A stretch of DNA of 64,000 bases, taken from the IMG/VR virus record IMGVR_UViG_3300045999_008996, positions 124,001 to 188,000 of that record; one strand, 5' to 3'. Numbering within the stretch: the first letter of the stretch is position 1; each line of letters begins with the position of its first letter. This document shows positions 32,470-61,318 of the stretch, piece after piece. Both the position numbers and the translations under genes were made by a program. Below the pieces are notes generated by a model that saw nothing but the letters and a program-made list of their open reading frames with translations, made no database searches and was not told the DNA's origin.

Positions 32470-33549
32470 TCAACCGATTGCTGGAGCAGTGAGAGCAACA
32501 GGAGTTGCTTCGGCAGCAGCCAGGTCCAGTGGGAAATTATGAGCATTACGCTCGTGCATTACCTCCATTCCCAGTCCAGCACGATTAAGGACATCAGCCC
32601 AGGTGTTAACTACACGACCCTGACTATCAAGCAGAGACTGATTAAAGTTGAAGCCATTCAAATTGAATGCCATCGTGGAAACACCAAGAGCAGTGAACCA
32701 GATGCCGACCACGGGCCAGGCAGCAAGGAAGAAGTGAAGTGAACGAGAGTTGTTGAACGAAGCGTATTGGAAGATTAGACGACCAAAGTAACCGTGAGCA
32801 GCAACAATGTTATAAGTCTCTTCTTCTTGACCAAACTTGTAACCATAGTTCTGTGACTCATTCTCAGTGGTTTCACGAACCAGTGAGGAAGTAACCAGAG
32901 AACCGTGCATCGCACTGAACAGAGAACCACCGAAGACACCAGCAACTCCAAGCATGTGGAAGGGGTGCATCAGGATATTATGTTCTGCCTGAAACACAAG
33001 CATGTAATTGAACGTACCAGAGATACCCAGGGGCATTGCGTCTGAGAAAGAACCTTGACCGAAAGGATAGACTAGGAATACGGCGCTTGCAGCAGCAACA
33101 GGTGCAGAGTAAGCAACGCAAATCCAGGGACGCATACCTAGGCGGTAAGAAAGTTCCCATTCACGACCCATGTAAGCATAGATGCCAATTAGAAAGTGGA
33201 ATACGACCAGTTGGAAAGGTCCTCCGTTATATAGCCACTCATCAAGTGAAGCGGCTTCCCAGATGGGGTAAAAGTGCAGTCCAATTGCGTTGGAAGAAGG
33301 AATCACAGCACCAGAGATGATGTTGTTTCCATACATGAGTGAACCAGCAACAGGTTCACGAATACCATCAATGTCCACGGGGGGAGCACCGATGAATGCG
33401 ATGATGAAGCAAGTGGTTGCTGCGAGCAATGTTGGAATCATCAAGGTTCCAAAATTGCCGATGTATATACGATTATCGGTAGAAGTAACCCAGTTGAGAT
33501 ACTTTTCCCAAAGATTTTCTTGTTGTTTTACTGAAATTGTAGCAGTCAT
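32470..33549 (-). CDS. psbA: Photosystem II D1 protein
   Basis: Full D1 from MTATIS to HNFPLDLA plus C-terminal extension; no intron; start re-assigned to 33549. Confidence 0.99.
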
Positions 33550-33570
33550 TTTTTTAAGAGAGTTAGTTAA

Positions 33571-33670
33571 GAGTTCGGGGGAACGAACTGATACAATTAT
33601 GCTCTGCGACACCCTCCATCGCAGATATGAAGGACGGATTTTACTTGCCCATTAGTCCTGGTGGGGCAAG
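33571..33670 (-). ncRNA. Structured psbA leader of PhotoRC-II type
   Basis: TTGCCC..AGGACT..GGGCAA hairpin whose loop is complementary to downstream GTCCT (pseudoknot), then TCTGCGA..TCGCAGA and GTTCG..CGAAC hairpins. Confidence 0.6.
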
Positions 33671-33713
33671 GTGTTTATGAGATTTGTTTATAAAACTTAA
33701 CAAACCTCATTAC

Positions 33714-33748
33714 CTATTTAGTATAGGGCATCACTCAATTTTCGTCAA
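33714..33748 (-). promoter_or_regulatory. psbA sigma70 promoter plus adjacent late promoter
   Basis: TTGACG-17-TATACT immediately followed by TAAATA; the -35 box lies in the last codons of the HNH gene. Confidence 0.75.
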
Positions 33749-34370
33749 GTCCTTCTGGGGTCTTTTTTCTGGACCACTTGTGAAACTGGCAGTGCTTCTT
33801 CATACTCTCACTTCTTTTCTTATTACTTTCTTCACTAAAAACTTGTTGTGCTCTTTTATCTCTTATTTTCTGTTTACTCTCTTCACTATGATTTTTATTT
33901 TCACACCCTTTCTTTGGTCCTGGTTTGAGGTGTAGTTCATACCCAAATTTTGAACACTCCCGAATAGCCCTTTTAATTTGATGTTCTTTTAGTCCCAGCA
34001 AATCAGCAACTTCTTTTCTACTCATACCAGATTGTCTATATTTAAGAATAGAAAGTTCTTGCTGTGTTGGTTCTGTTTTTTTAGGTGGTCCTCCACCAAC
34101 TCTTACACCTTTCTTATTTTCAGTTCCATTTTTCTTTCTTGTTTCATATCCTTTTCTTGCCCACAAGACACTTTCATTTTCGTGGACTTCTGCGTGAAGT
34201 GCTGGATGATAAACATATAAGTGCTCTGGAATGTTTCTACCACCTTCACATCTTGGTGGATTATGGTGAACATCCATATCTTTCATTTGCTCATCAGTAA
34301 GTCCATAGTGCTGTTGAGCAACTTTACGATAGTTATGTTTATCAGTAGAGAGAACAATAGCAGAGCACAT
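33735..34370 (-). CDS. HNH homing endonuclease with HTH and NUMOD3 DNA-binding modules
   Basis: DVHHNPPRCEGGRNIPEHL..LHAEVH nuclease motif; MSRKEVADLLGL HTH; HSEESKQKIR NUMOD3. Confidence 0.8.
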   Translation of the reverse strand: MCSAIVLSTDKHNYRKVAQQHYGLTDEQMKDMDVHHNPPRCEGGRNIPEHLYVYHPALHAEVHENESVLWARKGYETRKKNGTENKKGVRVGGGPPKKTEPTQQELSILKYRQSGMSRKEVADLLGLKEHQIKRAIRECSKFGYELHLKPGPKKGCENKNHSEESKQKIRDKRAQQVFSEESNKKRSESMKKHCQFHKWSRKKTPEGLDEN

Positions 34371-34374
34371 AAAA

Positions 34375-34412
34375 AACTCCAAACCTACTATTATTTAGGT
34401 AGGTTTGGAGTT
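34375..34412 (-). promoter_or_regulatory. RBS-sequestering hairpin enclosing a late promoter
   Basis: 14-bp perfect inverted repeat AACTCCAAACCTAC/GTAGGTTTGGAGTT; loop CTAAATAATA; GGAG in the 3' arm. Confidence 0.85.
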
Positions 34413-35295: not shown

Positions 35296-35431
35296 GTTTT
35301 TAATTCTTGCTCGTCTTTTAACTCATGATTGGATAATGCTTGAGAATAGAAGACCTATTCCTAAAAGACAACCACCAGAAATAATTCGTTTTATTCGTAG
35401 ACCTGCTAAAAGAGGTAGAAAACTAAAATGA
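35276..35431 (+). CDS. Small basic protein (51 aa)
   Basis: MKAIIVEFLILARLL..RRPAKRGRKLK; coupled to the next gene. Confidence 0.45.
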   Translation: MKAIIVEFLILARLLTHDWIMLENRRPIPKRQPPEIIRFIRRPAKRGRKLK

Positions 35432-35688
35432 AAAATATCAGTTCATTCACAGCAATTAGGTTAATAATTCTTGGATGGTCTGCTACTTTATTGACACTAA
35501 ACTATATGGATTACTTAAAAAAAATGGATGCTACTTTCATAGCATCCGTATTTACTTCTGCACTAGCAACTTTTGGAGTTGATGCAGCTAACAAAAAATC
35601 AAAGACCAGCCTTGATAAATCTGTAGATTGTGATGCCTGCAGATCCAAGAGTAGCAAAGAGAGCACCCAAACTACTGAAGAAACCTGA
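35428..35688 (+). CDS. Two-helix membrane protein (holin candidate)
   Basis: Two hydrophobic segments and a charged C-tail; converges on the lysozyme operon. Confidence 0.5.
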   Translation: MKNISSFTAIRLIILGWSATLLTLNYMDYLKKMDATFIASVFTSALATFGVDAANKKSKTSLDKSVDCDACRSKSSKESTQTTEET

Positions 35689-36378
35689 TATCTTTTCTTC
35701 CAAAGGTTTTCTTTCTACGTGAAATAACTCTCTATTATCATATATCCATTGCCACATAGATATTCTCATATCTTCTGGAACTAATGGATCAATCCAGGAA
35801 CTAATTTCACTTTCTCTATCTCCAACAAGGATTCCGCTTTTATTGTAAGTGCGTATTCTTGTAATATTGTATTCACCAGTATAATCTACTTGTTTGTCAG
35901 CAATTTCATCAGCAACCTAAAAGTCAATATCTGCTTGAACACGCTCATAATGAGTTTTCATAAAAGTAACATCCAATTCAACATCACCGTTTTCTGGTCT
36001 ATAAGGATGTGAAACACCATTCACACAAACTTCAAGTGTTCCTGGATGTAGTTTATTTTGAGTTGGGAATACTTGGCAGATTAATGGTTTAGGAATCAAC
36101 CAGGATGTTTTCGTTAAAGCAAAGTATGGAATTCCAATAGAGAGAGTAATTGGTATTCCAAAAGCAAGTATTCTTTTTCGGTGACTGTTAATTATCGTCT
36201 GGGCAGCTTCACCAAGATCTTTTGTTCTAGCAGCGTGGATTACCAAAAGATTACGAAACGATTGTAGTCTTTTACGAAATCCAAGTTCATATTGCGATTC
36301 TTCAGCAACAAGTATCATATTATCCAGCTTCTGTAACAAGACCACATGATCTGTGTTGTTACATTGCTCGGCGGGCAT
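35599..36378 (-). pseudogene. 259-codon membrane-protein gene interrupted by one in-frame TAG at 35917-35919 (nonsense allele or readthrough)
   Basis: After ..QADIDF-TAG the same frame stays open for 105 codons (VADEIADKQVDY..LGSAGITIYRFIKAGL-TGA) and has no start codon near the TAG. Confidence 0.7.
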
Positions 36379-36422
36379 TTATTTAATACTAGACGATATG
36401 ACTATTTATTGATTGTAACAAA

Positions 36423-36881
36423 TTATGAAAACCAAAGTTTACCTTCTGCAACTCTTCTTCTCTTCAATCCCGCTTCCACACTTGTTCCTGGGTTATGATA
36501 AAGATATAAAGCATCAGGTACCTTAGTCCATTCTTTATTTTTAAGAACTCTGGTTATGGTATTAAAATTGGAAGACCCGTAAAAACCAGCACCAAGATTA
36601 TAAGCAAAAGAAAGAAGTGCTCCTTTTTGATTTTCATTCATTTCACTCCAGTAAGGTATTCTTTGTAGTGATGGCAAAAATCTATTCTTTAAATCAAATT
36701 CAAGTAGAGTGTCTGCATACTTTTGAGTAATCACTCTACCTATTTTGAAGGGTGTCCCATCAAAGTCTTTAGTGCTTCCCCAACCAATTGTAATCGGCGG
36801 TCCTTTTGTTAAAGGATCTGGATAAGCATTTAAATGACATCCTTCAAACTCTTTGATTAAATTAATGCCAACCAACGGCAC
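36423..36881 (-). CDS. GH24 phage lysozyme domain (GTG start; probably reached by -1 frameshift from the upstream gene)
   Basis: IKEFEG..AY.D..TIGWGST..ALLSFAYNLG..GL.RRR..E. Confidence 0.9.
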   Translation of the reverse strand: MPLVGINLIKEFEGCHLNAYPDPLTKGPPITIGWGSTKDFDGTPFKIGRVITQKYADTLLEFDLKNRFLPSLQRIPYWSEMNENQKGALLSFAYNLGAGFYGSSNFNTITRVLKNKEWTKVPDALYLYHNPGTSVEAGLKRRRVAEGKLWFS

Positions 36882-36923
36882 TTCATTGGCATTATTAATG
36901 TTAGTTGGCGCTTCTACTTTTTT
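36867..36923 (-). promoter_or_regulatory. -1 programmed ribosomal frameshift signal
   Basis: A AAA AAG (36923-36917) directly before TAG, 7-nt spacer, 10-bp stem GCCAACTAAC/GTTGGTTGGC; the -1 frame is the lysozyme frame. Confidence 0.8.
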
Positions 36924-37609
36924 GCATCAAAAATACGACCCCAACCAGTCTTATCTCTTCCTTTTTCTAACCAACGATAAGTAAGGTCTGACTTTTTATA
37001 GACTGAACCTTTACCATTCGTAACTGGTCCAGTGTAACCATCGTTTAGAGAACCATAAGGATCGTTAACAACGTAGTCCTCACCTTTCTTTCCAATCACT
37101 ACAACCATGTGCCCGCCAGTAGGATTAGATAAAGAGCCGCGGTGCAGGATACCAATAACGACAGGTCTCCCAGCAGATAACTCACGATCAAGATCAACAA
37201 ACCCAAGATTGTAACTAAAGCGTGACTTAATTCCATAATTTTCCAGAACTTTTGTCTGGACGGTGTGATCAGTTGAATCACCAATCGCAAAAACTTTTTG
37301 GACATAGGCATCATCGCCTTTTGCTCCTTGAAGCGTACCTGGTTTGAAATACTCTAGGCACATCGCACAAGCAGATGAGTTGCAAGTTCTTTGTGCATCT
37401 CTATAATTATCTGTTTGTGGATAAAAAGGAACAGGAAGAACTCCAGGAACAGTTGGTTTTGTTCTATAAATTCTAACCCAATTAGAAGTGTCTTCAAGCA
37501 AATCTGGGTTCTTACTTACAAGATCAACCTCAAATTGTTCTACAGCAGCAACATGCTTTGGATTGTTCTCATCATAATGTTTAAAAAAGTTATGAAGATC
37601 TACTCTCAT
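36914..37609 (-). CDS. Peptidase C39-like protein (putative endolysin N-terminal part)
   Basis: VPFYPQ..TCNSSACAM (Cys), GGHMVVVIG (His), VNDPYG (Asp); late promoter AATAAATA upstream. Confidence 0.85.
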   Translation of the reverse strand: MRVDLHNFFKHYDENNPKHVAAVEQFEVDLVSKNPDLLEDTSNWVRIYRTKPTVPGVLPVPFYPQTDNYRDAQRTCNSSACAMCLEYFKPGTLQGAKGDDAYVQKVFAIGDSTDHTVQTKVLENYGIKSRFSYNLGFVDLDRELSAGRPVVIGILHRGSLSNPTGGHMVVVIGKKGEDYVVNDPYGSLNDGYTGPVTNGKGSVYKKSDLTYRWLEKGRDKTGWGRIFDAKK

Positions 37610-55886: not shown

Positions 55887-55939
55887 TGTTTTGAATGTTG
55901 ACCTTAGTATTATAAGGGTTTGACAGGTAATCTGTCAAG

Positions 55940-56012
55940 TGCTCCTTGCGTGGATCGAACACGCCTCAGGCGAATTATGAGTTCGCTGCATTCACCAGAT
56001 TGCTAAAGGAGC
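55940..56012 (-). tRNA. trnI: tRNA(CAU), probably Ile2 (lysidine type)
   Basis: Anticodon arm GCGAA-CTCATAA-TTCGC resembles the cyanobacterial Ile2 arm and lacks the fMet GGG/CCC pairs. Confidence 0.8.
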
Positions 56013-56016
56013 AAGG

Positions 56017-56104
56017 TACGAGTGGGTGGATTCGAACCACCTCAAAGCCGCTAATCTGGCGGAAAGGCGTTATAAGTGCCCTCTGACTACCAAGTCTCAC
56101 TCGC
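56017..56104 (-). tRNA. trnI: Atypical tRNA-Ile(UAU) with long variable arm and 4-nt D loop
   Basis: GCGAGTG/CACTCGT acceptor, loop CT-TAT-AA, extra CCGC/GCGG arm, GGTGG-TTCGAAT-CCACC. Confidence 0.7.
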
Positions 56105-56142
56105 TTGAACCAGGTCTATTATAGAGGACCTGGAACTCTATG

Positions 56143-56373
56143 TCAAGAACCTTCTTCGTGGTCAGTGTGTATTCGTATCATATCATCATCCACTTTAGAT
56201 TCTACTGCAAACTTTATAGTTTCGTTATATGGAACAATCACTGCGTTTCTTTCTCCATCAGTAATAATAAATGATTCGCCGTTCTCTACTCTTTGTATTA
56301 GATTGTCAAAATCTACTTGAAACTCTTGAACTGTAAATTTTTGGAGATCTGAAAGTTCTGGATACATTTTCAT
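56143..56373 (-). CDS. Orphan Phd/YefM-fold antitoxin-like protein
   Basis: FTVQEFQVDFDNLIQRVENGESFIITDGERNAVIVPY follows the Phd pattern VE.GE...IT....AVIV. Confidence 0.55.
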   Translation of the reverse strand: MKMYPELSDLQKFTVQEFQVDFDNLIQRVENGESFIITDGERNAVIVPYNETIKFAVESKVDDDMIRIHTDHEEGS

Positions 56374-56389
56374 AAAGTGAAGTTTATGA

Positions 56390-56461
56390 TCGGGGTGAGA
56401 GGGATCGAACCTCTGTCTTCTTGCTCCCAAAGCAAGCCGTCTACCGCTGACTTACACCCCG
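56390..56461 (-). tRNA. trnP: tRNA-Pro(UGG)
   Basis: CGGGGTG..CACCCCG-A; TT-TGG-GA. Confidence 0.95.
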
Positions 56462-56578
56462 TTATTTGTTTCTGTGTATAAACATAATACCAGCAAATGG
56501 TACGATTGTCAACCCACATCCACAAAGAAAAAGAAAGAAGGGACTTGCTGCTAATGTTTCAACAAGATGAAAAATCAT
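56462..56578 (-). CDS. Small membrane protein (38 aa)
   Basis: MIFHLVETLAASPFFLFLCGCGLTIVPFAGIMFIHRNK. Confidence 0.5.
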   Translation of the reverse strand: MIFHLVETLAASPFFLFLCGCGLTIVPFAGIMFIHRNK

Positions 56579-56802
56579 CTTCCCCTCCAGTTCTTGTATT
56601 CATAATACATGTATTGGTCGGTTTCGTCAAGCCCCTGTAAAGGAGCATGAACGTCCCAGTGTGACCATTCAATACAGAACTGTTTAATATGTATATCATT
56701 AACAGCAGTCTTTACTCCATACATTCTAGAAAATGAAGACATTGCAAAATGATATTTTTGTCTAATGTGCGGTTCCATTTCCCTTATATTCTTTGGAGTC
56801 AT
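56575..56802 (-). CDS. Hypothetical protein
   Basis: 75-aa ORF with GAGGAGG RBS. Confidence 0.65.
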   Translation of the reverse strand: MTPKNIREMEPHIRQKYHFAMSSFSRMYGVKTAVNDIHIKQFCIEWSHWDVHAPLQGLDETDQYMYYEYKNWRGR

Positions 56803-56870
56803 AGTATCCTCCTCTTGTTCCGAAATAGAGTGTTGTTAAAACAAACGGAATAGAAATGAAAATAAGTGCT

Positions 56871-57893
56871 TTACCTAACATGATGTCCCCCAAACATATA
56901 ACGCATTCCGTTTAGGATTTTTGCTCCGAATGATCCGAGATTGCGTGAGTTAAATCTTTCAAATAGTGCTGTAGTAATAACAGGAGCGGGAACCCCCAGG
57001 TCCACAGCGGCAGAAACAGTCCAACGACCCTCACCACTATCGGATACTCCTCCAGAGAACTGTTTAAGGCTACCATCCCGGCGTAACACATCAGCAGTAA
57101 GATCAAGTAACCAAGACCCAACCACGCTACCGCGACGCCATAACTCAGCAACCTCAGCAACATCAATATCATAACAATAGGATTCGGGGTCTGCCATAGG
57201 GGCGACTTCTGCATCTCCTTCTCTAACATATTTGGCACCCACATTAGCGTTCTTCAGAATGTTGAAACCTTCTGCATATGCTTGCATTATTCCATACTCA
57301 ATACCGTTGTGAACCATCTTCACAAAATGTCCTGCACCTGGACCACCACAATGCAACCAACCAAACTCAGCAGAAGTTACATCCGAGTCATACTGAGTCC
57401 TGGGGGCAGCGTTGATTCCTGGAGCGAGGGCATCAAAAATGCTTGCACAAGTGGCGACCGCAGTATTTCCGCCACCAACCATAAGACAGTATCCACGATC
57501 CAAACCATAAACACCGCCGCTAGTACCACAATCAATATATTGGATACCAAGTTTTGCAAGACGCTCTGCTCTCTTCCGACTGTCTTTAAAATTGCTATTG
57601 CCATGATCAATAATAATATCTCCCTCACCACAATATCGTAGTAACTCATTGATTGTTTCCTCTACAGTTTCTGCTGGCACAACCATTTGAAATATTCCTG
57701 GATTGCCATTACCTTTTACTACTTGAACAAGGCTTTGTATAGTAGTCGTAACACCATTAACATATCCGTTTTCATATGCTTCTTGAGCCTTTTCATAGTT
57801 CCTTCGGTAACCCCAAACCTCAATACCCGCTTTCATCATGCGGCGAGACATTCCTTCACCCATTCTTCCCAAACCAATTAATCCTACTTTCAT
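56871..57893 (-). CDS. gnd: 6-phosphogluconate dehydrogenase (decarboxylating, short type)
   Basis: GLIGLGRMG, IDHGNS, DCGTSGG, GHFVKMVHNGIEYG, DSGEGRW, FGGH. Confidence 0.96.
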   Translation of the reverse strand: MKVGLIGLGRMGEGMSRRMMKAGIEVWGYRRNYEKAQEAYENGYVNGVTTTIQSLVQVVKGNGNPGIFQMVVPAETVEETINELLRYCGEGDIIIDHGNSNFKDSRKRAERLAKLGIQYIDCGTSGGVYGLDRGYCLMVGGGNTAVATCASIFDALAPGINAAPRTQYDSDVTSAEFGWLHCGGPGAGHFVKMVHNGIEYGIMQAYAEGFNILKNANVGAKYVREGDAEVAPMADPESYCYDIDVAEVAELWRRGSVVGSWLLDLTADVLRRDGSLKQFSGGVSDSGEGRWTVSAAVDLGVPAPVITTALFERFNSRNLGSFGAKILNGMRYMFGGHHVR

Positions 57894-57985
57894 AAAACCT
57901 CCGGATATGCGTGTGTAAGTCCCCAATGTATAAAAAGTCCAATAGACGAAAAAAGAAGAATTGTAGATATTATTGTTTTAATCAT
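57890..57985 (-). CDS. Small membrane peptide (31 aa)
   Basis: MIKTIISTILLFSSIGLFIHWGLTHAYPEVL, ATGA-coupled to gnd. Confidence 0.5.
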   Translation of the reverse strand: MIKTIISTILLFSSIGLFIHWGLTHAYPEVL

Positions 57986-58091
57986 CTTCTTCATCTTCGT
58001 AAGCAGATGGTTCTTCAAAGAGTTCTTCCATTTTTTGTTGAAGAACTCTTTTGTTTAGTTTTTGCAAATCTTCTTCTGTGATTGTTACCAT
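57978..58091 (-). CDS. Small acidic protein (37 aa)
   Basis: MVTITEEDLQKLNKRVLQQKMEELFEEPSAYEDEEDD. Confidence 0.55.
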   Translation of the reverse strand: MVTITEEDLQKLNKRVLQQKMEELFEEPSAYEDEEDD

Positions 58092-58294
58092 TAGTTTAAA
58101 GTAATTTTAAGAAATGGAAGTAACGGGGGAATAACTCCAACTAATCTCAAAAGTCCCTCAGCAAATAAAGCAAGAACCACCCAACCGACGCACATACTAA
58201 TGATAGAAGCATTACGGTTGTGTCTTCGGATAGCAGCATCAATCATCTCCTGAACTTCAGAACGTGTGATAAATTCTTCTTGTTCGTGCATCAT
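58091..58294 (-). CDS. Small membrane protein
   Basis: QEMIDAAIRRHNRNASIIS + TM helix. Confidence 0.65.
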   Translation of the reverse strand: MMHEQEEFITRSEVQEMIDAAIRRHNRNASIISMCVGWVVLALFAEGLLRLVGVIPPLLPFLKITLN

Positions 58295-58440
58295 TTTTCA
58301 TCGCCAAGAAATTTTGCAAGAGGGTCTCTTCGGGTTTTTACGATTTCAACTGCTCTTTTGTAGAACATATTATCCATGTTCCCAGAAGATTCAAAAGTTG
58401 CTTTGATCTTCACCCAATTATCGTAGGTGTGTTGATCCAT
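58291..58440 (-). CDS. Small protein (49 aa)
   Basis: MDQHTYDNWVKIKATFESSGNMDNMFYKRAVEIVKTRRDPL.. Confidence 0.6.
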   Translation of the reverse strand: MDQHTYDNWVKIKATFESSGNMDNMFYKRAVEIVKTRRDPLAKFLGDEK

Positions 58441-58555
58441 CGGTTCGTCCCCGTGATACTACTATATACTAATCACAGGTATTTCGATGTCAACTTTTTG
58501 TGTTCATATCGTAACACTGTTGAAAAAATTATTAAATTTGTAACTATTCTTAAAA

Positions 58556-58641
58556 CGGAAGCGGTAGGATTTGAACCCACGAACGCTATTAACGTTGGTT
58601 GTTTTCAAGACAACTGCCATAAACCACTCGGCCACGCTTCC
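58556..58641 (-). tRNA. trnS: tRNA-Ser(UGA)
   Basis: GGAAGCG..CGCTTCC-G; CT-TGA-AA; long variable arm. Confidence 0.95.
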
Positions 58642-58651
58642 AGTAGAAGGT

Positions 58652-58903
58652 TCAACGAACCTCAAAATCCAATCGTTTTACTTTACGTTGGCGTCTTGCT
58701 TCTTGAAAAGCAAGATCTTGCGAAGAAAGAACATTTGATTTTTGTTCTTTCTGGATAGAGTTTAACATAACAATGCGAGATAAGTCAAGTGCTGATATCT
58801 TATCTCCACGAATTGTTGCCATATTAGGACAACCACAGGTCACCGTTTTTGAATGATGTCCTGTTATTTCCTTATTACAATCTTTGCATCTTATTGAAAT
58901 CAT
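58652..58903 (-). CDS. Putative Zn-binding hypothetical protein
   Basis: CKDC..CGCPN. Confidence 0.65.
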   Translation of the reverse strand: MISIRCKDCNKEITGHHSKTVTCGCPNMATIRGDKISALDLSRIVMLNSIQKEQKSNVLSSQDLAFQEARRQRKVKRLDFEVR

Positions 58904-58918
58904 GATTCTTCATCCTAT

Positions 58919-59353
58919 TCATTGCAGGTGTGCTCTTAACTGCCAAACAAACTTACCATGAGATTCCATTAAATCTTGAACTAAATTTGCTGTAGCATAT
59001 GACTTTTGATTTTCAGATTCTTCCGAAATCTCTACCATTAAATCACAAAACTTGGTATTGTTATCAAGAAGCTCTTGAAGCATTTCTTTTGCTCCAGTTG
59101 AACTTGCTGCCTCTTTGATTTGAGTTACCTCAAGCATTCTAGAAAGAGAACTGAGAGGTTTTACATTCAAATAACGCATATGTTCCGAAAGACGATCAAT
59201 CTCTTCAAACATAGTTTCATACTGACCGCCAAAGAGTTGATGAAGTTGAGTGAAGTCTTCACCTACAACATTCCAATGAAATGCCCAAGTTTTATGGAAT
59301 AAAACAAAAAGCGATGACTGTGCATCACTCAAGAGTTTATAAAGTTTTTCCAT
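58919..59353 (-). CDS. dps: Dps ferritin-like DNA-protecting protein
   Basis: HWNVVG.DF..LH..F..QY..E.ID..SE..K..W.L; start re-assigned to MEKLY (track extension overlaps tRNAs). Confidence 0.9.
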   Translation of the reverse strand: MEKLYKLLSDAQSSLFVLFHKTWAFHWNVVGEDFTQLHQLFGGQYETMFEEIDRLSEHMRYLNVKPLSSLSRMLEVTQIKEAASSTGAKEMLQELLDNNTKFCDLMVEISEESENQKSYATANLVQDLMESHGKFVWQLRAHLQ

Positions 59354-59381
59354 TATACTCTTTTTATTTTTATTTATCAAG

Positions 59382-59454
59382 TGGGCAAAGAGGGATTCGA
59401 ACCCCCGACATCCTCCGTGTAAAGGAGACGCTACTACCGCTGAGCTATTTGCCC
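59382..59454 (-). tRNA. trnV: tRNA-Val(UAC)
   Basis: GGGCAAA..TTTGCCC-A; TT-TAC-AC. Confidence 0.95.
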
Positions 59455-59529
59455 TGGCTCCACAACCTGGATTCGAACCAGGGACCAAGTGATTAACAGT
59501 CACCGACTCTACCGCTGAGCTATTGTGGA
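59455..59529 (-). tRNA. trnN: tRNA-Asn(GUU), CCA encoded
   Basis: TCCACAA..TTGTGGA-G-CCA; CT-GTT-AA. Confidence 0.95.
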
Positions 59530-59533
59530 ATGA

Positions 59534-59603
59534 AGGAAGTTACTGGACTTACACCAGTTACGAGGGCATTGTCTGCTTGTCTTGATTCTTTGACTTAACT
59601 TCC
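59534..59603 (-). ncRNA. tRNA-like RNA with collapsed anticodon arm
   Basis: Perfect 7-bp acceptor GGAAGTT/AACTTCC, 5-bp T stem ACTGG/CCAGT with TGTAAGT loop, 3-bp D stem; no canonical anticodon stem. Confidence 0.55.
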
Positions 59604-59643
59604 TTTGGCGTCTTTCTATGCTATCTGCATAACGACTACCAAG

Positions 59644-59715
59644 AGCGAAAGACGAGATTCGAACTCGCAACAACCTGCTTGGAAGGCAGGGACTCTACCG
59701 TTGAGTTACTTTCGC
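59644..59715 (-). tRNA. trnG: tRNA-Gly(UCC)
   Basis: GCGAAAG..CTTTCGC-T; CT-TCC-AA. Confidence 0.95.
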
Positions 59716-59754
59716 AATGAGACAATCATAAACTATTTTAGTTTGATTGTCAAG

Positions 59755-59836
59755 TGTCGATGAGAGGACTTGAACCTCCACAGATTAATCTACTGGAACC
59801 TAAACCCAGCGCGTCTACCAATTCCGCCACATCGAC
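59755..59836 (-). tRNA. trnL: tRNA-Leu(UAG)
   Basis: GTCGATG..CATCGAC-A; TT-TAG-GT; variable arm present. Confidence 0.95.
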
Positions 59837-59930
59837 TTGATGGAGTAAGTATGATATACCTCATAAGGATATAACAGTGACTTACCCTCTATCATTTTAT
59901 ATATTAACAGACTCAAAAGAATCTGTCAAG

Positions 59931-60003
59931 CGTCCTTTGAGAGATTCGAACTCCCGCACATAGGTTCGTAGCCTACTGCTCTATTCCACTGAGCTAAAAG
60001 GAC
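59931..60003 (-). tRNA. trnR: tRNA-Arg(ACG)
   Basis: GTCCTTT..AAAGGAC-G; CT-ACG-AA. Confidence 0.95.
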
Positions 60004-60006
60004 AAG

Positions 60007-60078
60007 TTCTGAGGGTAGGATTCGAACCCACGAATGGCGGGACCAAAACCCGCTGCCTTACCGCTTGGCGACCTCAGA
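60007..60078 (-). tRNA. trnQ: tRNA-Gln(UUG)
   Basis: TCTGAGG..CCTCAGA-A; TT-TTG-GT. Confidence 0.95.
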
Positions 60079-60150
60079 AGCCCTCAATTGGATTTGAACC
60101 AACGACCTACTCATTACTAGTGAGTTGCTCTACCACTGAGCTATAAGGGC
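60079..60150 (-). tRNA. trnT: tRNA-Thr(AGU)
   Basis: GCCCTTA..TGAGGGC-T; ACTCA-CT-AGT-AA-TGAGT. Confidence 0.9.
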
Positions 60151-60152
60151 GG

Positions 60153-60223
60153 GGTGCCGTGAGGGAATCGAACCCTCATATAGAGAACCACAATCTCCTG
60201 TCTTACCATTAGACTAACGACAC
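60153..60223 (-). tRNA. trnH: tRNA-His(GUG)
   Basis: GTGTCGT..ACGGCAC-C; TT-GTG-GT. Confidence 0.9.
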
Positions 60224-60224
60224 A

Positions 60225-60298
60225 AGGCAGTAGATAGATTTGAACTATCGACCATAGGCATATGAGACCCGTGCTCTGCCAGACTGAGCTATACTGCC
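60225..60298 (-). tRNA. trnM: tRNA-Met(CAU), elongator type, weak anticodon stem
   Basis: GGCAGTA..TACTGCC-T; CT-CAT-AT. Confidence 0.8.
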
Positions 60299-60300
60299 AA

Positions 60301-60389
60301 CGGAAGTGGTTGGATTCGAACCAACGGATGCCTATAAAGACATCGGCGGATTAGCAATCCACTGCATTAGACCTCTCTGCCACACTTCC
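60301..60389 (-). tRNA. trnS: tRNA-Ser(GCU)
   Basis: GGAAGTG..CACTTCC-G; TT-GCT-AA; long arm. Confidence 0.95.
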
Positions 60390-60391
60390 AA

Positions 60392-60465
60392 TAGGAATGG
60401 TGAGATTCGAACTCACGACCACACGATTATCAGTCGTGTACTCTAACCAACTGAGCTACATTCCT
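60392..60465 (-). tRNA. trnI: tRNA-Ile(GAU)
   Basis: AGGAATG..CATTCCT-A; CT-GAT-AA. Confidence 0.95.
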
Positions 60466-60466
60466 G

Positions 60467-60541
60467 TGGTATTCCTAACGGGATTCGAACCCGTGCTGCC
60501 ACCTTGAAAGGGTGGTGACCTAACCGCTAGTCGATAGGAAC
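60467..60541 (-). tRNA. trnE: tRNA-Glu(UUC), CCA encoded
   Basis: GTTCCTA..TAGGAAT-A-CCA; CT-TTC-AA. Confidence 0.95.
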
Positions 60542-60589
60542 TTAATGCTGACGGCATTCTGGATTATCAGCTCCAGCGCAAATCAGCAA

Positions 60590-60661
60590 CGACTCTAACG
60601 GGATTTGAACCCGTGATACTACCGTGACAGGGTAGCGTGATAACCGCTTCACTATAGAGTC
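60590..60661 (-). tRNA. trnD: tRNA-Asp(GUC)
   Basis: GACTCTA..TAGAGTC-G; CT-GTC-AC. Confidence 0.95.
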
Positions 60662-60665
60662 AAGG

Positions 60666-60747
60666 TGGGAGGAGCAGGATTCGAACCTGCGAAGGTAGAA
60701 CCGTCTGATTTACAGTCAGATTCCTTTAGCCACTCGGAAATCCTCCC
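60666..60747 (-). tRNA. trnY: tRNA-Tyr(GUA)
   Basis: GGGAGGA..TCCTCCC-A; CT-GTA-AA; variable arm. Confidence 0.95.
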
Positions 60748-60750
60748 AGA

Positions 60751-60823
60751 TGGGTATGGTCGGGTTCGAACCGACGACTTACAGGTTAAAAGCCCGCTAC
60801 TCTACCAACTGAGTTACATACCC
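60751..60823 (-). tRNA. trnK: tRNA-Lys(UUU)
   Basis: GGGTATG..CATACCC-A; CT-TTT-AA. Confidence 0.95.
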
Positions 60824-60939
60824 TTAGAATTAAATTGTCAAGGTTCGGGGTGTGGTCTCTCTCGACCACTTGATTAGAATACCACCTTTTGGACTCTGGG
60901 GGGAGATTGGTGGACACTTAGGAAACTGGTCCAAGCAAC

Positions 60940-60977
60940 AAAAAAGGGGAGGAAACTTTTGGTTTCTCTCCCCTCTA
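60940..60977 (-). terminator. Terminator downstream of tRNA-Arg(UCU) and the long hairpin
   Basis: GGGGAGAGAAACC..TTTCCTCCCC followed by T5. Confidence 0.6.
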
Positions 60978-61004
60978 TTTGCTTTTATGGATTGCATATT
61001 ACAT

Positions 61005-61100
61005 ATGTCTTTCCATTTCAGCAAACAGGGGATTACCCTCAATATGCCAATCACGGCAATCGAGAGTACTAATCTGTTTGGTGGTGATTTGGAAAGACAT
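61005..61100 (-). ncRNA. Candidate rod-shaped ncRNA (~96 nt)
   Basis: Nested inverted repeats ATGTCTTTCCA/TGGAAAGACAT, CAAACAG/CTGTTTG, ATTA/TAAT, CTC/GAG, TGCC/GGCA. Confidence 0.5.
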
Positions 61101-61152
61101 TGTTTTCGACCTAAGTGTTTTTATTTATAAGACTTTTATTTAAAAAGTCTAA

Positions 61153-61226
61153 CGGGTTAGGAGGGACTCGAACCCCCGACCAATTCATTAGAAGTGAATT
61201 GCTCTATCCATCTGAGCTACTAACCC
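61153..61226 (-). tRNA. trnR: tRNA-Arg(UCU)
   Basis: GGGTTAG..CTAACCC-G; CT-TCT-AA. Confidence 0.95.
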
Positions 61227-61318
61227 AAGAGACCTCTCTGTTTGTGCTTCTATGAGAGGCATGAGAGGGGTGAGACTTATATGAGGTTTGGACCCTCACT
61301 GCTCATATGATTATTGTA

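What the first reader, a model, noticed from the sequence alone, without database searches (positions are those of the whole stretch)
35599..36378. Single in-frame amber codon in the membrane gene beside the lysozyme
Seen: ..GAC TTT TAG GTT GCT GAT.. followed by 105 further open codons ending in an amphipathic/TM helix, with no start near the stop. TAG is one transition away from CAG (Gln), and the distal part overlaps the holin candidate antisense for 90 bp. Known: stop-codon recoding in lysis-related genes has been described in other phage groups. No CUA-anticodon tRNA occurs in this window. Inference: either a recent nonsense or assembly variant, or regulated readthrough giving 153-aa and 259-aa forms, the longer with a second membrane anchor.
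Basis: partly seen in the sequence, partly recalled or inferred. Interest (0 to 1): 0.62.

Follow-up and report, generated by a model that had tools for sequence, protein, structure and literature searches.

The report
Natural amber mutation in cyanophage membrane gene
The in-frame TAG is a real, recent Trp-to-stop mutation carried by some natural strains of a freshwater T4-like cyanophage. It cuts short a conserved but uncharacterised membrane protein beside the lysozyme, and nothing suggests it is read through.

Summary
On the minus strand, 153 codons (36378-35920) end at TAG (35917-35919). A further 105 open codons run to TAA at 35599-35601.

About 110 relatives from freshwater viral and metagenome contigs are uninterrupted proteins of roughly 259 aa, and every one has TGG (Trp) at this codon. 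The ancestral codon is therefore TGG, not CAG.

Public assemblies show both alleles in near-identical strains:
- TAG is found in two 2025 lake-water runs, one of which may be the source of this DNA.
- TGG is found in a 2017 and a 2021 run.

So the TAG is a real polymorphism, not an assembly error.

Nothing points to recoding:
- The complete 222.5-kb genome encodes 22 tRNAs, none with a CUA anticodon.
- TAG ends other genes normally, including the peptidase two genes upstream.
- This is the only interrupted long frame in the genome.

The stop falls at the end of strand 4 of a six-stranded periplasmic beta domain. It removes the rest of that domain and the second membrane helix, so the allele most likely loses function.

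The more interesting result is a by-product. This unnamed family is almost always paired tail-to-tail with a two-helix DUF6450 gene, overlapping it by 57-90 nt, in at least two phage types. That pair is probably a lysis-related membrane module, but this is inference.

The parts
35920..36378 (-). Codons 1-153 of the interrupted gene. They encode an N-terminal cytoplasmic helical hairpin, TM1 (residues 69-89, 36112-36174) and the first four beta strands of the periplasmic domain.
   Evidence: ORF. (aligns to residues 1-153 of 259-aa relatives). (AF2 secondary structure). (hydropathy).
35917..35919 (-). Amber codon TAG at codon 154. Relatives have TGG (Trp). The changed base is 35918: plus-strand T here, C in the Trp allele.
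   Evidence: codons in homologous loci. (T in runs X1 and X2, C in X3 and X4). (Trp in all relatives).
35602..35916 (-). Codons 155-259, still open. They encode beta strands 5-6, two short helices and the C-terminal transmembrane helix (residues 233-255, 35614-35682).
   Evidence: (only about 3 residues differ from the closest relative). (dN/dS about 0.03-0.17 against relatives)..
35599..35601 (-). Normal TAA stop of the 259-codon gene.
   Evidence: same gene length, 780 nt, in relatives.
35428..35688 (+). Convergent DUF6450 gene. It encodes 86 aa with two hydrophobic helices and a hydrophilic Ser/Thr/Lys-rich tail. It is the constant partner of the interrupted gene.
   Evidence: PF20048, E 8.5e-19. 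(PHROGs of unknown function). (partner in about 80 loci). (hydropathy).
35599..35688 (.). A 90-nt 3'-to-3' antisense overlap. One strand encodes the C-terminal membrane helix of the 259-aa protein, the other the tail of DUF6450.
   Evidence: Overlap of 57-90 nt conserved. Synonymous divergence is lowered here.
36423..36881 (-). Phage lysozyme, 152 aa, with no N-terminal signal-anchor. It lies directly upstream in the same minus-strand gene row.
   Evidence: PF00959, E 4.5e-22. (matches cyanophage lysins).
36914..37609 (-). C39-like cysteine peptidase with an endolysin-type PHROG match, 231 aa. The gene ends in TAG (36914-36916), which shows TAG acts as a stop in this operon.
   Evidence: (TAG stop, 18 open codons after it). 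(relatives also 231 aa).
35526..35547 (.). Terminator-like hairpin with T runs on both strands. It lies about 50 nt beyond the 259-codon gene's stop, inside the DUF6450 ORF. This is a pattern match only.
   Evidence: 3 sites found against 2.0 expected in shuffles, so weak.

Best explanation
A single G-to-A transition changed the invariant Trp154 codon (TGG) of a conserved 259-aa inner-membrane protein into amber (TAG) in one lineage of a freshwater T4-like cyanophage. The allele segregates in nature beside the intact one. It is translated by the ordinary code, so the product stops at residue 153.

The truncated protein keeps the cytoplasmic hairpin, the first membrane helix and four of the six strands of the periplasmic beta domain. 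It lacks the rest of that domain and the second membrane helix. It is therefore most likely misfolded or inactive, making this a very young loss-of-function allele (incipient pseudogene).

Shown here: the ancestral codon, the polymorphism, the absence of a suppressor tRNA, normal use of TAG as a stop, and the position of the stop in the predicted fold.

Inferred: loss of function, and that the gene together with its DUF6450 partner serves lysis or envelope control.
For: - Ancestral codon: 31 full-length relatives have an invariant Trp at column 154. The codon is TGG in all five loci read at the DNA level. 38 of 38 IMG/VR loci that span the codon, and all metagenome loci that cover it, have Trp and no stop there.
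- Polymorphism: position 35918 is T in X1 (possible source) and in X2, a run from another study (contig 35520-36040, no differences, depth about 278). It is C in X3 (2017, depth 105) and X4 (2021, four contigs, depth 139). These strains otherwise differ at only two or three sites in 1.7 kb.
- Assemblies: the 153-aa product is also called on a 222,522-bp JGI contig that is identical over 6.4 kb.
- No recoding: 22 tRNAs and no CUA anticodon in a genome rated 100% complete with terminal repeats. 7 of 45 ORFs of at least 150 aa in the window end in TAG. Among them is the C39 peptidase, whose relatives have the same 231-aa length. This is the only interrupted long frame in the genome.
- Recent origin: the distal part has no further lesions and is about 97% identical to the closest relative. 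dN/dS is about 0.1 on both sides of the stop.
- Structure: the periplasmic domain model has pLDDT 91, and Trp154 ends strand 4 of 6. The unit TM, beta domain, TM is the conserved core even in distant and tandem family members.
Against: - Only assembled contigs could be laid, not raw reads, so minor alleles within X1 and X2 are invisible.
- X1 may be the source sample. X1 and X2 are both 2025 lake-water runs and may not be fully independent.
- The family is under purifying selection and nearly always intact. A null allele that dominates two samples is therefore somewhat unexpected, which leaves room for hitch-hiking or for selection of the truncation.
- No RNA or protein data exist, so low-level readthrough cannot be excluded.
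- The host is unknown, so a host suppressor tRNA cannot be excluded.
Confidence: 0.85

Rival explanations
1. Adaptive truncation. The amber allele is favoured by selection. It removes or alters a non-essential regulator of lysis timing or superinfection, comparable in logic to rapid-lysis mutants of T4, and so rose to dominance in some lake populations.
For: - The TAG allele is the only allele seen in the contigs of two 2025 runs, one at depth about 278.
- The same haplotype carries a second non-synonymous change in this gene, N20 where relatives have K/R.
- Other possibly broken alleles of the family exist. These are a 185-aa internally truncated form and frameshifted loci L055 and L094.
- The gene sits beside two cell-wall hydrolases.
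Against: - About 95% of assembled copies are intact, and dN/dS is about 0.1.
- The other broken copies may be assembly errors. One is a deletion in a short T run.
- Dominance in two possibly related samples is equally explained by clonal hitch-hiking.
- The function is unknown.
Confidence: 0.1
2. Regulated or programmed readthrough of the amber codon yields both a 153-aa and a 259-aa form. The longer form has a second membrane anchor.
For: - The distal frame is intact.
- Stop-codon recoding linked to late and lysis genes exists in other phage groups (PMC9523058, PMC10607447).
Against: - None of the roughly 110 relatives has the stop. All have TGG.
- Near-identical strains have TGG.
- No suppressor tRNA is present in the complete genome.
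- TAG ends the neighbouring gene and six other long ORFs in the window.
- There is only one such site in the genome.
- An intact distal frame is expected anyway for a very recent mutation.
Confidence: 0.03
3. Sequencing or assembly error. The true sequence is TGG.
For: - The difference is a single base.
- The window genome derives from a metagenome.
- Contig-level data hide minor variants.
Against: - The same base stands in contigs of a second run from another study at depth about 278, and in the possible source run.
- It also stands in a separately filed 222,522-bp contig.
- It is a substitution, not a homopolymer indel.
Confidence: 0.02

Closest known systems
Ordinary nonsense (amber) alleles of phage genes, such as classical T4 or lambda amber mutants and young pseudogenes
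   Same: A single transition turns a sense codon into TAG. The ancestral codon is kept in relatives. There is no dedicated decoding machinery, and the downstream frame is still intact because the change is recent.
   Different: It is seen here as a natural polymorphism that dominates environmental samples of an uncultured cyanophage, not as a laboratory mutant kept on a suppressor host.
TAG-recoded phages (code-15-like crAss-like and related gut phages; PMC9523058, PMC10607447)
   Same: There is an in-frame TAG in a phage gene that lies near lysis genes.
   Different: Those genomes carry TAG in many ORFs (41 in phAss-1 according to the abstract of PMC10607447) and use suppressor tRNAs. Here there is one TAG, no suppressor tRNA, TAG is used as a normal stop, and relatives have Trp rather than a shared TAG or Gln.
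Phage lysis-module membrane proteins: T4 holin T with antiholin RI, and unimolecular spanins of the T1 gp11 type (comparison from general knowledge)
   Same: The gene lies next to an endolysin. The protein is membrane-anchored with a sizeable periplasmic domain. A C-terminal membrane helix and a beta-rich periplasmic part recall unimolecular spanins, and a small two-helix partner gene recalls class II holins.
   Different: There is no Pfam or PHROG holin, T-holin or spanin match. No lipobox is present before the conserved Cys101. The first helix follows a 68-residue cytoplasmic domain. The periplasmic fold did not match T4 T or RI structures in the PDB searches.
Haemophilus influenzae Protein E (PDB 3ZH5, 6GUT), the best structural neighbour of the periplasmic domain
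   Same: A six-stranded antiparallel sheet is packed against a C-terminal helix (Z 6.7-6.9, about 100 residues aligned, rmsd 4.0-4.4).
   Different: The score is in the range the tool calls common for unrelated folds. Sequence identity is 9-10%. Protein E is an outer-membrane lipoprotein adhesin. No function can be transferred.

Membership tests
Stop-codon (TAG) recoding phage | Phage-encoded suppressor tRNA with a CUA anticodon | tested here: not met
   ARAGORN finds 22 tRNAs in the complete 222,563-bp genome, none with CUA.
Stop-codon (TAG) recoding phage | Many conserved genes interrupted by in-frame TAG, and TAG not used as a terminator | tested here: not met
   Only one interrupted long frame exists in the genome. 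7 of 45 long ORFs in the window end in TAG, with 4-42 open codons after the other six. The C39 peptidase ends in TAG at the same 231-aa length as its relatives.
Programmed translational readthrough | The stop codon and the open downstream extension are conserved among relatives | tested here: not met
   Trp (TGG) stands at this codon in all relatives. These comprise 31 proteins, 38 viral loci and about 44 metagenome loci. Near-identical strains also have TGG.
Programmed translational readthrough | Both short and long products are made | not testable with these tools
   No proteomic or ribosome data are available.
Recent nonsense polymorphism (incipient pseudogene) | A sense codon in relatives lies one substitution away from the stop | tested here: met
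   TGG in relatives against TAG here.
Recent nonsense polymorphism (incipient pseudogene) | Both alleles are present in natural samples of the same strain, and the allele is not an assembly artefact | tested here: met
   T in X1 and X2, C in X3 and X4 at position 35918, with 0-3 other differences in 1.7 kb. This is contig-level evidence only.
Recent nonsense polymorphism (incipient pseudogene) | No secondary decay downstream of the stop | tested here: met
   There are 105 open codons after the stop, with about 3 residue differences from the closest relative. dN/dS against relatives is 0.03-0.17.
Holin, T4 T-holin or spanin families (for the 259-aa protein) | Sequence match to a curated holin or spanin family | tested here: not met
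   No Pfam hit except a sub-threshold CBM_26 match, and no PHROG. No PDB sequence hit.
Unimolecular spanin | N-terminal lipoprotein signal with a lipobox Cys, plus a C-terminal membrane helix | tested here: not met
   The C-terminal helix is present. However, the first helix follows a 68-residue cytoplasmic domain. The residue before the conserved Cys101 varies (A, I, T, L, G, Y, F or M), which does not fit a lipobox.
DUF6450 (PF20048), for the partner gene | Score above the Pfam gathering threshold | tested here: met
   67.6 bits against a cut-off of 25. The family has no known function, and no paper in the library mentions it.

The most novel reading that the evidence does not exclude
The amber allele is not a passive defect. 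It is a selected knockout or shortening of a lysis-timing or superinfection-control protein that works with the overlapping DUF6450 two-helix protein. On this reading, a natural lake population of a T4-like cyanophage has swept to a 'rapid-lysis-like' genotype, and the conserved tail-to-tail overlapping gene pair is a new kind of phage lysis-control module.
Probability: 0.1. Interest if true: 0.6.

Novelty: new member of a known kind. Interest (0 to 1): 0.3.

Why it matters
The amber codon itself is ordinary. It warns against reading single in-frame stops in metagenome-derived phage genomes as recoding.

Two by-products are of modest value:
- The data show a loss-of-function allele of a conserved phage gene dominating some environmental samples while intact alleles dominate others. 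That gives a natural handle on whether the gene is dispensable.
- The work defines an unnamed family of about 259 aa (TM, beta domain, TM) that is almost always locked in a 57-90-nt antisense overlap with DUF6450, next to the endolysins of freshwater T4-like cyanophages. Holins and spanins of cyanophages are still poorly known, so this pair is a reasonable candidate to test.

Tried and rejected
- Cultured phages: tblastn of either half against 50,697 phage records found nothing. The family is absent from cultured phages in that collection.
- Family scans: Pfam, PHROGs and the PDB sequence search gave no family for the protein. The ESM-Atlas feature search gave no usable hit.
- Fold searches with the whole model were swamped by helical-hairpin matches. 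The domain alone gave only middling matches, best Z 6.9 to Protein E. The atlas shape search gave TM 0.40 at best. No function was transferred from any of these.
- Complex prediction of the 259-aa protein with its DUF6450 partner returned 'no answer', score 0.00. This is not evidence either way.
- T4 holin T and spanin identity were considered and not adopted (see the membership tests).
- S-ShM2 gene 161, a 256-aa protein after DUF6450 in marine cyanophages, was inspected. It shows no obvious similarity.
- RNA folding of the overlap region is no more stable than shuffles, z +1.6.
- The literature search on cyanophage holins gave nothing specific, and no paper mentions DUF6450.
It was re-run by reference.
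- TAG=X was used only as a placeholder for the search. No alternative genetic code is claimed.
The stretch laid was 1,701 letters.

Full report
**Setting**

The window is bases 124001-188000 of a 222,563-bp virus record. The record has direct terminal repeats and is rated 100% complete. It carries a T4-type major capsid gene, psbA and 22 tRNAs, and is 36% G+C. Runs that hold the stretch are lake, freshwater, wetland and aquaculture metagenomes. The nearest cultured relatives of the neighbouring lysozyme are Synechococcus myoviruses, at 69-74% nucleotide identity. It is therefore an uncultured freshwater T4-like cyanophage.

**Checking the observation**

On the minus strand an ATG at 36378 opens 153 codons that end in TAG at 35917-35919. 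The same frame then stays open for 105 codons to TAA at 35599-35601. The first possible start after the TAG is 50 codons on.

The last 90 nt (35599-35688) are antisense to the end of a plus-strand 86-codon ORF that matches Pfam DUF6450. No tRNA with a CUA anticodon lies in the window or anywhere in the genome.

The pattern is not chance. Only 1.1% of stop-to-stop intervals in this genome reach 105 codons. Among 163 stops that close an open stretch of at least 150 codons, this is the only one followed by a long open frame without a start within 13 codons.

**Both halves are one gene**

The frame was read through with X at the stop and used as a query. The word search found 35 relatives, about 30 of them uninterrupted proteins of 256-263 aa at 40-91% identity. 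In the alignment Trp is invariant at column 154. At the DNA level the codon is TGG in all five fetched loci, followed by the same GTT GC(T/A) GAT context.

A scan of IMG/VR gave 39 loci. All 38 that span the codon have Trp, and none has an internal stop. A scan of JGI metagenome contigs gave 47 more loci, and every one that covers the codon has Trp there. The change is therefore TGG to TAG, a G-to-A transition, and not CAG to TAG.

**Is the TAG real?**

Contigs of four public runs were laid on 35300-37000.
- At 35918 the plus-strand letter is T (TAG) in X1. This is a 2025 lake-water run that may be the source of this DNA, at depth 17.
- It is also T in X2, a 2025 lake-water run of another study. 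A 521-nt contig spans the site with no differences, at depth about 278.
- It is C (TGG) in X3, a 2017 crustacean-associated metagenome, at depth 105.
- It is C in X4, a 2021 freshwater metagenome, in four contigs at depth 139.

X3 and X4 share two further differences from the window. These are 36319 A>C, which gives K20 instead of N20 in the same protein, and 36430 A>G near the lysozyme's C-terminus.

The 153-aa product is also called on a 222,522-bp JGI contig that is identical to the window over 6.4 kb. That contig may be the same population.

Taken together, the amber allele is a natural variant of a strain whose close kin carry the intact gene. The caveats are that only contigs could be laid, not raw reads, and that X1 and X2 may not be fully independent.

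**Is it decoded as a stop?**

Everything points to yes.
- No suppressor tRNA is encoded.
- In the window, 7 of 45 ORFs of at least 150 aa end in TAG.
- After the other six TAG stops only 4-42 open codons follow.
- One of the six is the C39-type peptidase two genes upstream in the same gene row. Its relatives have the same 231-aa length.
- Recoded phages in the literature carry TAG in many ORFs and use suppressor tRNAs (PMC10607447 and PMC9523058, found). Neither feature is present here.
- Programmed readthrough would predict a conserved stop, and no relative has one.

**Age of the mutation**

The distal 105 codons differ from the closest relative at about three residues. Against 13 relatives, dN/dS is about 0.1 both before and after the stop. 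Such comparisons mostly reflect history before the mutation. They show that the distal part has not started to decay, so the mutation is very recent.

**What the protein looks like**

Hydropathy and charge give the following layout:
- an N-terminal cytoplasmic part, residues 1-68;
- a membrane helix at 69-89, preceded by basic residues;
- an acidic stretch at 96-229;
- a second hydrophobic helix at 233-255, followed by basic residues.

This means both ends are inside the cell and the middle lies in the periplasm.

AlphaFold2 with the family alignment predicts a long helical hairpin that runs into TM1. It then predicts six antiparallel strands, two short helices and a final long helix. The periplasmic domain folded alone has pLDDT 91 and pTM 0.85. 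Cys101 and Cys118 are invariant and lie on neighbouring strands.

Trp154 is the last residue of strand 4. The amber product therefore lacks strands 5-6, the helices and TM2, and is most likely unable to fold. This last point is inference.

Fold searches gave only middling neighbours. Haemophilus Protein E scored best, at Z 6.7-6.9. A muramidase-associated chain (9M3L) recurred weakly. No function is transferred from these.

**The family**

An exhaustive profile search of 1.84 billion representative proteins found only 27 clusters. They include the following forms:
- forms of about 200 aa that lack the cytoplasmic hairpin;
- forms of about 450 aa that repeat the unit TM, beta domain, TM twice;
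- no form with any Pfam domain.

One tandem form lies beside a glutathione S-transferase gene on a short contig. The conserved core is therefore exactly the unit that the amber codon cuts in half.

**The conserved partner**

In all 39 IMG/VR loci a DUF6450 ORF lies convergent to the gene and overlaps its 3' end by 57-90 nt. The same holds in about 41 of 45 metagenome loci that include the 3' end.

The pair occurs in two settings. One is T4-like, with the C39 peptidase and lysozyme directly upstream. The other is phage contigs with a family-A DNA polymerase and no adjacent lysozyme. The pair therefore travels as a unit.

DUF6450 has two strongly conserved hydrophobic helices and a variable hydrophilic tail encoded by the overlap. 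Synonymous divergence in the overlap (dS mostly 0.15-0.4) is well below that in the rest of the gene (0.5-1.8). This fits a constraint on both strands.

A small two-helix protein with a charged tail next to endolysins has the general look of a holin, but this rests on general knowledge rather than a test. My working model, at about 0.35 confidence, is that the two proteins form a lysis or envelope-control module. The complex prediction gave no verdict.

**Other broken copies**

- One relative, P0020, is called as a 185-aa product that ends inside its contig.
- L055 has a one-base deletion in a short T run.
- L094 has a frameshift.
- L068 looks chimeric.

These may be errors. At most they hint that the gene is lost now and then.

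**Verdict**

The explanation is the plain one: a young natural Trp154-to-amber allele that truncates a conserved membrane protein. There is no evidence for recoding or programmed readthrough (confidence 0.85). Whether the allele is neutral, mildly harmful or favoured cannot be decided from contigs.

The finding itself is of low to moderate interest. The conserved overlapping pair of the 259-aa family and DUF6450 is the part worth an experiment.

Noticed in passing
window 35599-35688; also L001, L004, L007-L045 and L050-L096: The 3'-to-3' antisense overlap (57-90 nt) between the 259-aa family gene and DUF6450 is conserved in about 80 loci from at least two phage types. Synonymous divergence drops inside the overlap (dS mostly 0.15-0.4 against 0.5-1.8 elsewhere), which suggests dual coding or another constraint on both strands.
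   Followed up: partly
window 35526-35547: A terminator-like hairpin with T runs on both strands lies inside the DUF6450 ORF, about 50 nt past the stop of the convergent gene. If it is used, the two transcripts would overlap by more than 150 nt. This is a pattern match only (3 sites against 2.0 expected).
   Followed up: no
P0057-P0059, P0036 (about 200 aa); P0064-P0076 (427-477 aa); L099: The family also has short forms without the N-terminal cytoplasmic hairpin, and tandem-duplicated forms (TM, beta domain, TM, twice). One tandem form lies beside a GST gene and has no DUF6450 partner, so it is possibly cellular rather than viral.
   Followed up: partly
P0020 (contig without DNA); L055:148-923; L094:73-833; L068:110-643: There are other possibly broken copies of the same gene. 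These are a 185-aa product ending inside its contig, a 1-nt deletion in a short T run, a frameshift, and a chimeric 5' end. They may be assembly errors.
   Followed up: partly
window 36319 and 36430: The TAG haplotype differs from the TGG haplotype of runs X3 and X4 at two more sites, both non-synonymous. One gives N20 instead of K20 in the same protein, and the other gives F151 instead of S151 at the lysozyme's C-terminal end.
   Followed up: no
L001:8765-9469 and L002:5217-9232, compared with window 32470-34382: Related contigs carry an extra 234-aa Photo_RC ORF plus Endonuclease_7, Tad3 and NUMOD3 genes near psbA. The window has a single psbA followed by one 215-aa ORF. The psbA neighbourhood seems to be a hotspot for homing-endonuclease-type insertions.
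   Followed up: no
window 55939-61227: A dense array of 19 tRNA genes lies on the minus strand. There are 21 tRNAs in the window and 22 in the genome, and none is a suppressor.
   Followed up: yes
L006 (S-ShM2 137654-139482): In marine cyanomyoviruses the DUF6450 gene lies after regA. It is followed on the same strand by an unrelated 256-aa protein with a C-terminal membrane helix, and that gene in turn overlaps a convergent gene by about 218 nt. This may be an analogous arrangement.
   Followed up: no
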